Of a DNA stretch of 64,000 bases, positions 14,207-19,528 are shown piece by piece. The notes under the pieces are model-generated. The model had not been told where the DNA came from and did no database searches. It worked only from the letters and a program-made list of their open reading frames with translations. This stretch comes from Asterias rubens (taxonomy: Eukaryota). Where the stretch lies: positions 17,236,001 to 17,300,000 of the forward strand of contig NC_047062.1 in the NCBI RefSeq assembly GCF_902459465.1. The letters are read 5' to 3'. Position numbers and translations under genes: made by a program. Position 1 is the stretch's first letter. Each line of letters starts with the position of its first letter.

Positions 14207-14759
14207 GCTGGAAATAGCGACAACTTTGGGTGAGTTACAGATGCGGGGTCGTGTGACGTAATTGGATTAACAACAGGATACCGGCTACATAAATTAATCG
14301 ACTGTTTTGAGAATTTACGATATTGTACATAAACGGACAGACCAGCATGATGGAAAAATATTTATGACATTGTGAGTGAAGGAACGGGTCTGAGCGTAGT
14401 TTTTGCTGTAGTCAAACACTGGTTGGGACCTCTAATTTTCTTCGTCCATGTTGAGACTAGGATGGGAAGTAAGGAATGATAAACACATTCTTCGAAAACT
14501 AAAGTCAGTGATCTTCAAATTTCAGCTCGGCAGAGAACAACAACAACAAGCGCGGAGTGCGGATGGATGGGCCAACACGTATCGTAACAATTTGTAAATG
14601 ATGTAGGTACACAATGAAATTGAACCGGAAACAAAATTGATAACCAGGAAAGAGTTCTTGCATTGCTGATGACGTTGAGCTATGGGGAGCTAGGCCAGTC
14701 GGGAACTTTTACTACATATTATAGCTACACTTTCATAAAGAGTTGAAACGAAGACTATC

Positions 14760-16220
14760 ATGGGCTGCAAGAAAACACTCATTTTGTTTGTGTGTTGGAT
14801 TATTTACCTGTGTCTCGGTGCGTTGGCTTTCATCGCAATAGAGAAAGGAAACCTTGCGACGCAGCAGGAGGCACGTGCAGAGTTCAACGAGGCAGTCGCA
14901 GACTTTGCCCGCGAATACTCTTCGTGTGGAGTTACCAGAGACAGTCTGTTGACGTTCATGGTAAACAATGGACGGCACACCCAGACAAGAGGTGTGTTCC
15001 ACTTTAATGTAGATCCCTCGAAGGGGGTTCAAGAAGAATGGTCAATGACTAATGCGTTGGTCTTTACCTCCGAAATTGTTACTACCATAGGTGAGCATTT
15101 AGAAACTTTAATGGTGTCCAGAATAGCATCACACTTTCTCTCTCACTCTAGTAAAGGCTTTCTGATGTCTAAGTAGGATTTGAAACTTTGCATGGTGGAA
15201 ATACGATATGGAAATGGTTGTGGTAACATCATGTATAATGACTTCTATCTCTAATGAGTTGGGGTGGTTCTGAAAAAAACCGTTGGTTTCAACTCGACGT
15301 TTCGATCAGTATGCTTTGATCGTTTTCTGGAGAATACTTCCTCCTTTTCTCCAGAAGACGATCAGAGCATACTGATCGAAACGTCGAGTTGTTTTCAGAA
15401 CCACCCCAACTCATTGGAGATAGTCATACAGGATGTTACCGCAAACCTTTCCATATCTTTCTGATGTCAATACTTTTTATAAAGTCCTATTGTGCGGGGC
15501 AGACATTACACTCTTAAAACGCACATGGCCCAATTTCATAGAGCTGCTCAGCACAAACAAGTTCCACATATTGATCTAGTGTGTCTTCAACGAAAGTAGA
15601 ACAAGAAGATAAGAATGAATAAAAACGAAACTGTTTCCTATTCCTCTTTTAAAGGTCACGGCACGCTGACACCCTACACCGCCAGAGGGCGTCTCGCCTG
15701 CATTTTATACGCCCTCTTCGGCATACCACTCTGCGGCTTCATGCTCGCAGCCGTCGGTGACGCGGCACTCATCCTAGCCGATAAAATCGACGGAGTTTTC
15801 CGAAGGCGTCTCCGACTTGCTCTCCTAGTGAACGCTGCCCGTCTCTTCGTCATTGTATTGGTATTCTGGTCGATTACGGTGACGCTGCCAACGTTGATTT
15901 ACACCAGGACGGAGGGGTGGAACTGGGTCAAGGCACAATACTTCAGCTTCACAGGCATGAGTACAGTCGGCTTCGGAGACGTGAAGGTTAGCCTTCATAG
16001 ATACAAAGACTCAGTATTATTAGACTGGTGCTACAAAGGTGGCACAACCGTGTACTGCTTCCTCTGTCTTGGTATTGTCTCCACCGTCTTTAAGGTTATG
16101 TTTCGGTGGCACAAAAACCACATCCAGCAGACCAGAGCCAGATTCCGAACGTGGAGGCGAAAAAACTGCACTTCTAGAAGACGGTCCTCTAATTTAGCAT
16201 TCTTGAATACTCAGGACTGA
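14760..16220 (+). CDS. K2P channel paralog 3 (298 aa predicted), atypical P1 filter TIGHG
   Basis: Exons 14760-15090 and 15655-16220 (ATAG|gtgagc...aaag|GTCAC). Cap Cys (SSCG), P1 FTSEIVTTIG|HGT, P2 FTGMSTVGFGD. Confidence 0.9.
15172..15458. repeat. Inverted pair of Penelope-like repeat ends forming a long hairpin in the intron of K2P paralog 3
   Basis: The left arm (about 15172-15334) is the reverse complement of the family sequence in the right arm (15347-15458); loop tacttcctcctt. Confidence 0.85.
15349..15388 (+). ncRNA. Minimal type-I hammerhead ribozyme-like motif (U4A variant)
   Basis: CTC-CAGAAGA-C-GATCAG(agcata)CTGATC-GAAA-CG-TC^GAG: 3-bp stem I, 6-bp stem II, palindromic ACGT stem/loop III, GUC triplet. 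The sister copy at 46728 has the canonical CTGAAGA. Confidence 0.6.
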
Positions 16221-17110
16221 CCAAGATCCTAAGCCTCACCCTGATGTCATCCATGCCCGGAGCAGATTGGTGCCGATGATGCCGGAACTGGTCATGGTCG
16301 ATTCCTCGCAATCATCTTCCGGATGGGTTTGATTGCAAGTCGGGCTTGTGAGAGTGGAGCTGCAGCCCTCCAAACAGCTGCCCACATCACCAGTGACTGC
16401 GTTTGTCACACAGTTTGCAACCTGGCCAAATAATGCCTAACTTCTAGTCGTAGTTTAATCTGAGACATACGCATACAACATCTAAGCCTCAGTTAGCAGC
16501 TTTTAAATGTTTATCAAAATATAAAATAAACAGTACAAACAACAGTAGAACAACAATATCAGGCGTTACATACAAAAACAATACACCTTGAAAACCCTTT
16601 TCAGATTGAAAATGTCAATTACACGAAAGAAGATAGTCTTGGTTCAAACTTCCCTAGAAATTTGTTTGCCTGAACACATGCTCGGAGCGAAATAACGGTG
16701 GAAAATAACCTGGTAAATCTGCTGCCACAAATCGATCAAAAGCCTCCTATTAGATTTGGTTTGGCGAGATAAGATAAGACCCAAACTCAGCAACGGGTTG
16801 AGAACTGAAAACATTATAAGATTATTCCCCTTATTTTTCTGGTGACTCGGATGACCAATTGAGCATAAGATTTTCTTCACATGATACAATGGTCTTTGAC
16901 AGTTACAAATGTTGTTCATGAGCTTTTACCTTTGCATTGTTATCCCTTCATTGATGTTTTTATGCGCAGCAATCTAATGGGATACTTTGGGACGCAAGGG
17001 GGCAGCAGACCTACCAGGCAAATTTCCATTGTTTACATCGTTTGGAGCATGCGCACATTTCCAAGAGCTATGGATTTACCTTTTGGTAAGTGTGCTCATA
17101 AGTCTTTCAC

Positions 17111-18231: not shown

Positions 18232-19528
18232 ATGGGGATACGAAGGAGGTACCGCACGATACTCGTATGCCTCGTGTTCTGGATCTACCTCGCACTTGGC
18301 GCGCTTTCCTTCATGGCCATCGAGCGGGAAGCAGACGATGCCGAGACCAAACTCTCTCGGCGGGAACTTTACCGCGCACTGCAAAACTTCAGCGAAGAGA
18401 ACCGGGAATGTAACGCCACGACGGAGAACCTCCGAGGGCTCATGGAACAGGCTGAGATAGCTTGGAAACTCCGGAGAGTATTCCGTACAGACACTGATAC
18501 TACGAAGGGTATAGAGCCGGTGTGGAACATCGCTGACTCGATGGGCTTCGCGCTGTCGATACTTACTACTTGTGGTGGGTATATCCGTTTTAGTGCCAAC
18601 CAGCGTGTTGTAGCCATTTTCTTAAAAACAAAAATCCTTTGGTTCTAAGTGATGGCTTTGGGTACAATTTTTCATACATAATAGAGCTTTTATACCGCTT
18701 TTTTTGCCGTACCATATATGGACTAACAGAGACTCCTTTCTTTCATGCTTGGGCACACTGAAACATCGAATTTGAGAGCAAACAAATAAACGGTAATTCA
18801 ATAGCCATGTCCCTTCCCTTTCGGTGTATGTGGATTGCTTTGCCATATTAAACAATGAATAATGCTTCATAATCAATTAGTTGCCAACTATGGTTTTCTA
18901 GTCTATCCACCCTTCTCATTTATCTGTAGGCTACGGCGAATTGGTACCCATTACAAAGACAGGACAACTCATCTGTATTATCTACGCAGCTGTTGGTATC
19001 CCGTTATGTTACTACATGATACTGACCGTAGGCAAGACTTTTCGAGATTTGTGGTTTGCAATGTTGAGCTCTTCTTGCCAGCGATACAAAATCCCACGGC
19101 GAATTTCATACTTCCTCGTTCCCGTCATAGCACTGTGGATAGTCTTAGTCGTCTTCCCCAGCCTGGTGCTGATACAGACGGAGGGATGGCCTCTTTTGAC
19201 GGCACTGTATTTCAGTGTCATGTCGCTCAGTACCATCGGCTTCGGAGATGTGATGCCGCGAAGACCGAACCCGTATTCTGCTTTTTCTAATACCATGAAA
19301 CTGATCTTCATATTTTATATCCTGCTCTGTCTGAGCGTCATGTCAATCACGTTTGCATGTATAGCCAGGGTGCTTAAAGAATTCAAATCAAAGAGGAGAA
19401 GGAAGCAACAAGATGCCAGTCAGCGAAGGAATACGTTGGAAACGAACATTGATTTTGATGAAGAAGTAGAACCATATCGGGTTTGTAACGGCGACTCTCC
19501 CGTAAGCTCCACTGGGTCTGACTCTTAG
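18232..19528 (+). CDS. K2P channel paralog 4 (313 aa predicted), atypical P1 filter TCGYG
   Basis: Exons 18232-18574 and 18930-19528 (TGTG|gtgggt...gtag|GCTAC). Cap Cys (RECN), P1 ALSILTTCG|YGE, P2 VMSLSTIGFGD. Confidence 0.9.

What the first reader, a model, noticed from the sequence alone, without database searches (positions are those of the whole stretch)
15063..15665. K2P paralog 3: GHG filter combined with a Glu at the KcsA-E71 position
Seen: P1 reads F-T-S-E-I-V-T-T-I-G-H-G-T (GAA at 15072-15074, CAC at 15657-15659). Counting back from the filter glycine, the Glu aligns with KcsA E71 (usually Thr/Ser in K2P) and the His replaces Y78. Established: E71 and Y78 lie behind the filter and control C-type gating; K2P pH sensors in TASK and TWIK are histidines next to, not inside, GYG. 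Inference: a co-evolved Glu-His pair could give a proton-gated or selectivity-switching filter.
Basis: partly seen in the sequence, partly recalled or inferred. Interest (0 to 1): 0.7.

Follow-up and report, generated by a model that had tools for sequence, protein, structure and literature searches.

The report
Starfish K2P channel lacking filter tyrosine
A leak potassium-channel gene of the starfish Asterias rubens really has histidine in place of the tyrosine in its first ion filter, plus a rare glutamate behind it, and three other starfish genomes carry H, Q or E at the same site, so this is an old, maintained variant whose ion selectivity has never been measured.

Summary
Window 14760-16220 (+) holds an intact two-exon K2P gene of 298 aa in Asterias rubens. 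A phase-1 GT..AG intron (15091-15654) splits the first filter glycine. The spliced P1 reads FTSEIVTTIGHGT (E105 = GAA 15072-15074; H112 = CAC 15657-15659). P2 is the canonical TVGFGD.

It is neither an assembly error nor a pseudogene:
- A. amurensis keeps both residues, with His as CAT, a synonymous change.
- dN/dS between the two species is 0.44 (p = 0.007).
- A spliced A. amurensis transcript contig joins the two exons exactly.

New here: the genes in the same array slot (between the paralog-2 and paralog-4 orthologues) also lack the tyrosine. Patiria miniata has two copies with E...GEG and Acanthaster planci has E...GQG. An unnamed ENA contig has S...GHG.

So the Glu is old and widespread, and the Tyr site is polar but variable (H/Q/E). 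This does not fit a specific co-evolved Glu-His pair.

Best reading (inferred, untested): a starfish-wide K2P orthogroup with a NaK/CNG-like half filter, giving a less K+-selective, possibly pH-modulated leak. Rivals are a silent or regulatory subunit and a K+-selective proton-gated channel.

The scan noted this stretch before, on this same window only.

The parts
14760..15090 (+). Exon 1 coding part: M1, the two cap helices (cap Cys56 at 14925-14927) and pore helix 1 through the first base of filter Gly111
   Evidence: ORF and translation. The A. amurensis transcript contig lies unbroken on 14385-15088, so the 5' UTR is continuous with this exon. The AF2 model of the orthologue gives helices 2-27, 29-52, 60-76 and 96-108.
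15072..15074 (+). GAA = Glu105, in pore helix 1 at the KcsA-E71 position (Thr or Ser in 56 of 60 K2Ps)
15091..15654 (+). Phase-1 GT..AG intron that splits the first filter Gly codon; it contains a repeat hairpin of more than 100 bp
   Evidence: Sequence. The exact exon join 15088->15653, equivalent to 15090|15655, is seen in run X1 contig 1. Paralogues 2 and 4 and the Patiria and Acanthaster genes have an intron at the same position and phase.
15655..16220 (+). Exon 2 coding part: the rest of filter 1 (H112-G113-T114), M2, M3, pore helix 2, filter 2, M4 and the stop codon (16218-16220)
   Evidence: (Pfam Ion_trans_2, E = 4.7e-13)
15657..15659 (+). CAC = His112, replacing the Tyr of the GYG motif in filter 1
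   Evidence: A. amurensis has CAT, a synonymous change.
15963..15980 (+). Filter 2, T-V-G-F-G-D, canonical

Best explanation
SHOWN. This is an intact two-exon K2P (KCNK-type, 4TM/2P) gene, the third in a tandem array in Asterias rubens. Its first selectivity filter reads T-T-I-G-H-G instead of T-T-I-G-Y-G, and its first pore helix carries Glu at the KcsA-E71 position. It belongs to a starfish orthogroup that occupies the same slot in the array in Patiria and Acanthaster. In all six members sequenced across the filter, the filter Tyr is replaced by a polar residue: His (CAC/CAT), Gln (CAA) or Glu (GAA). These codons form a single-nucleotide-step series from TAY. Five of the six genes have the pore-helix Glu, as does the exon-1 fragment L019. 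In all six, the V-T-T-I-G...G backbone of filter 1 and the canonical filter 2 (GFG or GLG followed by Asp) are kept.

INFERRED MECHANISM. The Tyr side chain normally braces the outer half of the filter (sites S0-S2). In the dimer, two of the four filter strands lack this brace, while the lower T-T-I-G half is intact. That is the arrangement of the non-selective NaK (TVGDG) and CNG (TIGET) pores. The channel should therefore conduct but discriminate K+ from Na+ less well, giving a mixed cation or depolarising leak, as shown for the worm K2P UNC-58 with a different filter change. In Asterias the imidazole, together with the buried Glu105, could make that leak depend on pH.
For: Gene structure and family:
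- Pfam Ion_trans_2 hit.
- Best PDB sequence hits are TREK-2 and TRAAK, E = 4e-29.
- The AF2 model of the A. amurensis orthologue has pLDDT 87.8 and the M1-cap-PH1-M2-M3-PH2-M4 layout.
- All top Foldseek hits are K2P structures.

Real and maintained:
- A. amurensis XP_071793148 keeps E105 and H112, with His CAC->CAT synonymous.
- dN/dS is 0.44, with 19 synonymous against 28 non-synonymous changes, binomial p = 0.007. Changes concentrate in the cap.
- ORFs are intact in five species.

Transcribed and spliced:
- Run X1 contig 1 skips 15089-15652 exactly and reads through M4.
- Its differences are the A. amurensis allele: 16 of 16 listed differences match, and 23 = 23 in exon 2.
- The A. amurensis genome keeps the intron.

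Orthogroup:
- Synteny is paralog 2 - X - paralog 4 in A. amurensis, Patiria and Acanthaster.
- Filters are GEG twice in Patiria and GQG in Acanthaster, and GHG in the ENA contig.
- The tree gives the starfish clade 96/96*, and the six genes form one clade in the best tree.

Mechanistic analogy:
- NaK with TVGDGN has only sites S3 and S4 and is non-selective; changing it to TVGYGD restores four sites and K+ selectivity (abstract of PMC9822992).
- A filter variation makes the K2P UNC-58 constitutively Na+-permeable (PMC11513965).
- A filter point mutation makes TREK-1 Na+-permeable (PMC5376757).
- Tobacco TPK isoforms with VHG or GHG in pore 2 are on record (PMC3694395, PMC8619664).
Against: - No current has been recorded, so selectivity, conduction and pH dependence are all inference.
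- Only two of the four strands carry the change, and K2P filters tolerate non-aromatic Leu at this site in P2, so K+ selectivity might survive.
- From the classic Shaker mutagenesis (recalled, not checked here), polar replacements of the filter Tyr often give non-functional channels. That favours the silent-subunit rival.
- Expression in A. rubens itself is not shown. Three RNA-like runs held essentially none of the exon words.
- dN/dS is higher than in the neighbours (0.44 against 0.26 and 0.17), which indicates relaxed constraint.
- Monophyly of the GHG and G(Q/E)G groups has weak support (71/56), so the loss of Tyr could have happened twice.
Confidence: 0.4

Rival explanations
1. Silent or regulatory subunit. 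The polar residue at the Tyr site collapses filter 1, so homodimers do not conduct. The protein acts by heterodimerising with neighbouring canonical K2Ps (paralogs 2 and 4, or others) to damp or retune their current, or it stays in the ER.
For: - The filter Tyr/Phe is nearly invariant in P1 (57 of 60 sequences), and the residue is free to vary among H, Q and E within the orthogroup. Variation of that kind is expected if its exact chemistry no longer matters.
- dN/dS is raised relative to the neighbours.
- The gene sits in a tandem array of possible partners that share the cap cysteine.
- From memory: several mammalian K2Ps (KCNK7, THIK-2, TASK-5) give no current on their own.
Against: - V-T-T-I-G-x-G of filter 1 and the whole of filter 2 are invariant across all six genes. 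Such conservation is hard to explain for a pore that never conducts.
- The gene has been retained in both starfish orders sampled.
Confidence: 0.25
2. The channel stays K+-selective, but Glu105 and His112 form a titratable pair behind or within the filter that gates it (C-type) or switches its selectivity with pH.
For: - Both residues are present and conserved within Asterias.
- Glu at this position controls filter gating in KcsA, and His next to the filter senses protons in TASK and TWIK (established knowledge).
- His has a near-neutral pKa.
Against: - The pairing is not specific. Glu105 occurs with Glu or Gln at the filter site in Patiria and Acanthaster, and GHG occurs with Ser105 in the ENA contig.
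- The D80 equivalent that E71 needs in KcsA is Thr, Val or Leu in this orthogroup.
- In canonical filters the Tyr side chain points towards the neighbouring pore helix, not towards E71 (established structural knowledge; no coordinates could be checked here).
Confidence: 0.15
3. A decaying gene or an annotation or assembly artefact: the odd filter marks a duplicate on its way to becoming a pseudogene.
For: - The highest dN/dS of the three neighbouring genes.
- No exon words in three A. rubens RNA-like runs.
- The RefSeq model for A. rubens lacks M4.
Against: - Intact ORFs and conserved splice sites in A. rubens, A. amurensis, Patiria (two genes), Acanthaster and the ENA contig.
- dN/dS is significantly below 1.
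- A synonymous change falls at the His codon itself.
- A spliced mRNA exists in A. amurensis.
- The M4-less model is contradicted by that transcript and by conservation of M4.
Confidence: 0.05

Closest known systems
Canonical animal K2P channels (closest solved structures: human TREK-2/K2P10.1 and TRAAK/K2P4.1)
   Same: - 4TM/2P architecture, extracellular cap with an apex Cys, and a canonical second filter.
- A phase-1 intron in the first filter Gly.
- 28-30% sequence identity over the whole core.
   Different: - Filter 1 has His instead of Tyr/Phe.
- Pore helix 1 has Glu instead of Thr/Ser.
- The residue after the filter is Thr instead of Asn, His or Asp.
C. elegans UNC-58, a constitutively Na+-permeable K2P (PMC11513965)
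   Same: A K2P whose naturally diverged selectivity filter changes its ion selectivity; it is the functional precedent for the proposed mechanism.
   Different: - UNC-58's change is at another filter residue. A Cys in TxGYG is the change seen in paralog 4 of this same window, not in this gene.
- UNC-58 has been recorded; this channel has not.
NaK (TVGDG) and CNG (TIGET) non-selective cation pores
   Same: An acidic or polar residue sits at the Tyr position while the lower T-(V/I)-G half is intact. The Patiria orthologues read TIGEG. NaK loses sites S1 and S2, and Asp-to-Tyr together with Asn-to-Asp restores K+ selectivity (PMC9822992).
   Different: - Those pores are homotetramers with four altered strands; here only two of four strands are altered.
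- They are not K2P homologues at family level.
- Asterias has His rather than an acidic residue.
Tobacco NtTPK1 isoforms with VHG or GHG in the second pore (PMC3694395, PMC8619664)
   Same: The only GHG filter found in the literature search; it also occurs in a tandem-pore K+ channel.
   Different: It is a plant vacuolar TPK, the change is in pore 2 rather than pore 1, it arose independently, and no pore-helix Glu is reported.
KcsA E71 / Kir E138 pore-helix glutamate, and the TASK/TWIK filter-adjacent histidine
   Same: Glu at the identical pore-helix position, and a titratable His near the filter.
   Different: - The KcsA partner D80 and the Kir partner Arg are absent.
- The His lies inside GxG rather than after it.

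Membership tests
K2P (KCNK) two-pore-domain K+ channels | One polypeptide with M1-P1-M2-M3-P2-M4 | tested here: met
   Pfam Ion_trans_2. Full-length alignment to TREK-2, TRAAK and TREK-1. AF2 helices 2-27, 96-108, 120-162, 166-197, 201-212 and 231-305. Foldseek top 50 hits are all K2P.
K2P (KCNK) two-pore-domain K+ channels | Extracellular helical cap between M1 and P1 with an apex cysteine | tested here: met
   Helices 29-52 and 60-76. Cys56 (TGT 14925-14927) is conserved in the orthologues.
K2P (KCNK) two-pore-domain K+ channels | Intron interrupting the first Gly codon of the P1 filter (a family hallmark, from established knowledge) | tested here: met
   Phase-1 GT..AG intron 15091-15654. 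The same position is used in paralogs 2 and 4 and in the Patiria and Acanthaster genes.
K2P (KCNK) two-pore-domain K+ channels | K+ signature T-x-G-(Y/F/L)-G in both pore loops | tested here: not met
   P2 is TVGFGD, which meets it. P1 is TIGHG, which does not. The gene is a K2P by descent and fold, but not by the canonical signature of P1.
K2P (KCNK) two-pore-domain K+ channels | K+-selective background current | not testable with these tools
   Needs electrophysiology.
NaK/CNG-type non-selective filter (works-like comparison only) | T-(V/I)-G followed by an acidic or polar residue instead of Tyr, with loss of sites S1 and S2 | tested here: inconclusive
   The sequence pattern is met (TIGHG; the orthologues read TIGEG and TIGQG). 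Only two of the four strands would carry it, and the filter geometry is unknown.
KcsA-type E71-D80 inactivation network | A pore-helix Glu paired with an Asp directly after GYG | tested here: not met
   Glu105 is present, but the +1 residue is Thr114 (Val or Leu in the orthologues).
TASK/TWIK-type proton sensor | His immediately after G-Y-G of P1 | tested here: not met
   That position is Thr114. The His is the middle residue of GxG.

The most novel reading that the evidence does not exclude
Starfish have kept, since before the Forcipulatida-Valvatida split, a dedicated K2P orthogroup with two NaK/CNG-like filter strands (G-H/Q/E-G plus a buried pore-helix Glu). This would make it a Na+-permeable, depolarising leak. 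In Asterias it would be gated or retuned by protons through His112. That would be a second, independently evolved and mechanistically different sodium-leak K2P after nematode UNC-58.
Probability: 0.3. Interest if true: 0.75.

Novelty: new variant of a known kind. Interest (0 to 1): 0.58.

Why it matters
The filter tyrosine is among the most conserved residues in K+ channels. Its natural replacement by His, Gln or Glu in genes that have stayed intact across starfish orders amounts to an evolutionary mutagenesis series at that site, set in a heteromeric (2+2) filter.

If these channels conduct, they would show how much K+ selectivity two canonical strands can sustain. They would also add a second natural sodium-leak K2P after UNC-58, and might reveal a proton sensor inside the filter itself.

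The His, Gln and Glu orthologues, together with the Ser105 variant, form a ready-made panel for testing these ideas in oocytes.

Tried and rejected
- Word-indexed protein searches found almost nothing beyond the Asterias and Patiria proteins. The exhaustive HMMER search and gene neighbourhoods were what revealed the orthologues.
- The DNA of the ENA contig carrying P0031 and P0002 could not be fetched because the file was too large. Its splice junction and codons are therefore inferred by homology, and its organism is unknown.
- The organism of assembly GCA_014845345.1 (L019) is not named by the tools, and that contig lacks exon 2.
- Expression in A. rubens could not be settled. Reads were laid on runs X1, X2, X9 and X10. 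X9 and X10 showed only the intronic repeat and a little 3' sequence.
- Runs X4-X7 (kind unknown) hold 62-64% of the words of the 1.6-kb stretch and 100% of the exon-2 words. That share is close to the exon plus UTR fraction (about 65%), which hints that they are transcriptomes. I could not lay them, so this is not counted as evidence.
- The Glu-His distance could not be measured, because structure prediction returns no coordinates.
- Literature searches for Tyr-to-His filter mutants (Y78H, Y445H and similar) and for GEG or GQG filters returned only unrelated papers. No paper on echinoderm K2Ps was found.
- I did not run complex prediction. Dimerisation is a family property, and a pass would not separate the hypotheses.
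- Rejected readings are an assembly error, a private substitution and a pseudogene; the reasons are given under rival explanations.

Full report
**1. What is in the sequence.**

The window is Asterias rubens chromosome contig C1:17236001-17300000.

- Exon 1: an ORF starting at ATG 14760 runs to 15090, where the sequence reads ...ACC ATA G|GTGAGC.
- Exon 2: after a pyrimidine-rich tract and ...TTTTAAAG, the frame resumes at 15655 with GT CAC GGC ACG and runs to the stop at 16218-16220.
- Spliced product: 298 residues, with P1 = F-T-S-E-I-V-T-T-I-G-H-G-T and P2 = T-V-G-F-G-D.
- The stated codons are exact: GAA 15072-15074 is Glu105 and CAC 15657-15659 is His112.
- Counting back from the first filter Gly puts Glu105 on KcsA E71 and His112 on Y78.
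- HMMER aligns the two residues with the Thr of FAGTV and the Tyr of TIGYG in human TREK-2.

**2. It is a K2P by descent and fold.**

- Exon 2 hits Pfam Ion_trans_2.
- The full-length A. amurensis orthologue P0003 matches solved TREK-2, TRAAK, TREK-1, TASK-2 and TWIK-1 chains, with E down to 4e-29.
- An AlphaFold2 model of P0003 has mean pLDDT 87.8 and pTM 0.79. It shows M1, two cap helices, pore helix 1 (residues 96-108, which contain Glu105), M2, M3, pore helix 2 and M4.
- Its 50 best Foldseek matches in the PDB are all K2P channels.
- The cap cysteine (Cys56) is conserved.
- The phase-1 intron in the first filter glycine is shared with paralogs 2 and 4 and with the Patiria and Acanthaster genes.

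**3. Is it real, maintained and expressed?**

Conservation in the congener:
- A. amurensis XP_071793148 (P0003, 307 aa) keeps both residues.
- Its His codon is CAT against CAC in A. rubens, a synonymous change at the very site in question.
- Nei-Gojobori dN/dS between the two species is 0.44. There are 28 non-synonymous and 19 synonymous differences, and the binomial test against neutrality gives p = 0.007.
- The replacements are concentrated in the extracellular cap and just after the filter.
- The neighbours give 0.26 (paralog 2) and 0.17 (paralog 4).
- So the gene is constrained, but less tightly than its neighbours.

Transcript evidence:
- A 2119-letter contig of run X1 lies on 14385-15088, then directly on 15653-16214, then on 16215-16900. 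The intron is removed at the predicted junction, and there is no second intron.
- All 16 of its listed differences in exon 1 are the A. amurensis alleles. Its 23 differences in exon 2 equal the 23 between the window and the A. amurensis genome.
- The A. amurensis genome keeps the intron. The contig is therefore a spliced A. amurensis mRNA that, by this match, encodes Glu105 and His112.

A. rubens itself:
- Expression is not shown. Three RNA-like runs hold almost no exon words.
- One 151-nt metatranscriptome contig matches 14926-15076 exactly.
- The sequence is not private to the assembly. Five runs from three studies (X3-X8) hold 96-100% of the exon-2 words.

**4. The wider picture: a starfish orthogroup without the filter tyrosine.**

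Scan of the genome and the protein library:
- At least 12 K2P loci are found in the A. rubens genome, and only this one has GHG. The others read GYG or GFG in P1.
- Among the 150 closest cluster representatives of 1.8 billion proteins, GHG occurs only in the Asterias proteins and in P0002.

Gene neighbourhoods:
- In A. amurensis the order is paralog 2, this gene, paralog 4.
- In Patiria miniata the paralog-2 orthologue is followed by two 80%-identical genes (P0012, P0159) and then the paralog-4 orthologue. Both middle genes read F-A-F-E-V-V-T-T-I-G|E-G, with GAA for both glutamates.
- In Acanthaster planci the gene just upstream of the paralog-4 orthologue reads L-S-F-E-V-V-T-T-I-G|Q-G, with CAA for Gln.
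- An unnamed ENA contig carries exon 1 (P0031...F-T-T-S-I-V-T-T-I-G) and exon 2 (P0002, H-G-V-M-V-P...). That is GHG with Ser instead of Glu.
- A 738-bp contig of assembly GCA_014845345.1 has an exon 1 that is 71% identical and keeps F-T-S-E-I-V-T-T-I-G.

Phylogeny (IQ-TREE, LG+C20):
- All array genes fall in one starfish clade (96/96*).
- The GHG group has support 100/98* and the G(Q/E)G group 100/100*.
- The six genes together form one clade in the best tree, but with weak support (71/56).
- Synteny plus the complementary species content make a single orthogroup the simplest reading.

Consequences:
- Asterias is a forcipulatid, while Patiria and Acanthaster are valvatids. From general knowledge, the loss of Tyr would then predate the split of these orders, which is of Mesozoic age.
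- The codons TAY, CAY, CAA and GAA form a one-step series.
- In a 60-sequence K2P alignment, position 105 is T47/S9/E3/A1 and position 112 is Y49/F8/E2/H1. Every E and H entry comes from this orthogroup.
- Position 114, the KcsA D80 or TASK His98 site, is usually N, H, D or R. It is Thr, Val or Leu in this orthogroup.

**5.

- The two residues are real and rare, and they travel together in five of the six genes sequenced across the filter.
- The Glu is the older, more conserved feature. Its filter companion is His, Gln or Glu, depending on lineage.
- His also occurs without the Glu.
- A specific co-evolved Glu-His proton pair is therefore not what the comparative data show. With a single origin, covariation cannot be tested.
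- The KcsA E71-D80 interaction cannot exist here.
- In canonical filters the Tyr ring packs against the neighbouring pore helix rather than against E71 (established structural knowledge). I could not check the geometry, because no coordinates are returned.

**6. Most likely mechanism (inferred).**

- The invariant V-T-T-I-G-x-G of filter 1 and the invariant canonical filter 2 across all six genes argue that the pore is still used.
- Removing the aromatic brace from two of the four strands while the lower half is kept mimics NaK (TVGDG) and CNG pores.
- NaK has only sites S3 and S4 and is non-selective. It becomes K+-selective when Asp is changed to Tyr and Asn to Asp (PMC9822992).
- Natural or pathological filter changes make the K2Ps UNC-58 and TREK-1 Na+-permeable (PMC11513965, PMC5376757).
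- I therefore favour a conducting channel with reduced K+ selectivity, possibly pH-modulated in Asterias (confidence 0.4).

**7. Novelty.**

- The only GHG filter found in the literature is in pore 2 of tobacco TPK isoforms.
- No paper on echinoderm K2Ps turned up.
- This is a new variant of a known kind. It is a clear candidate for electrophysiology, and nature has already supplied the His, Gln, Glu and Ser105 comparison set.
- The scan had noted this same stretch and the neighbouring paralogs on this window. It has no note of it on other DNA.

Noticed in passing
window 15987-16265: The RefSeq model for this gene (XP_033637778, 276 aa) splices from GDVK|GTTAGC to ...GCAG|ATT. That removes M4 and the stop codon and adds an unrelated tail. 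The A. amurensis transcript contig and all orthologues read straight through M4, so the A. rubens model is probably mis-spliced.
   Followed up: partly
window 15170-15604 (inside the intron): An inverted-repeat hairpin lies in the intron. Its sequence reaches word depths of 10^4-10^5 in RNA-like starfish runs, with many rearranged joints. It is therefore a very abundant, probably transcribed repeat family. Another note of the scan describes it as hammerhead-bearing.
   Followed up: no
window 18232-19528 (paralog 4) and its orthologues L018:21205-22600 and L020:10001-13436: Paralog 4 reads TTCGYG in both Asterias species, but its Patiria and Acanthaster orthologues read the canonical TTIGYGD. 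The Cys therefore arose within the Asterias lineage.
   Followed up: partly
G000:C18:5034417-5039549 (L005, L007) and A. amurensis P0016: A further tandem pair from the same starfish K2P clade has an unusual P1, T-T-M-G-F-G-W, with Met before the filter Gly and Trp after it.
   Followed up: no
P0112 (Saccoglossus kowalevskii) and P0117 (Pinctada imbricata): There are other rare P1 variants among the closest K2P clusters. A hemichordate protein has the pore-helix Glu together with GLG (FATEVVSTIGLGQ), and a pearl-oyster protein has GNG without the Glu.
   Followed up: no
window 16214/16215: A. amurensis has 32 extra bases just before the A. rubens stop codon. This lengthens its C-terminal tail by 9 residues, giving 307 aa against 298 aa.
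   Followed up: partly
L018:10001-16904 (Patiria miniata): The GEG gene is tandemly duplicated in Patiria (P0012 and P0159, 78-81% identical). Both copies keep the Glu and the GEG filter.
   Followed up: partly
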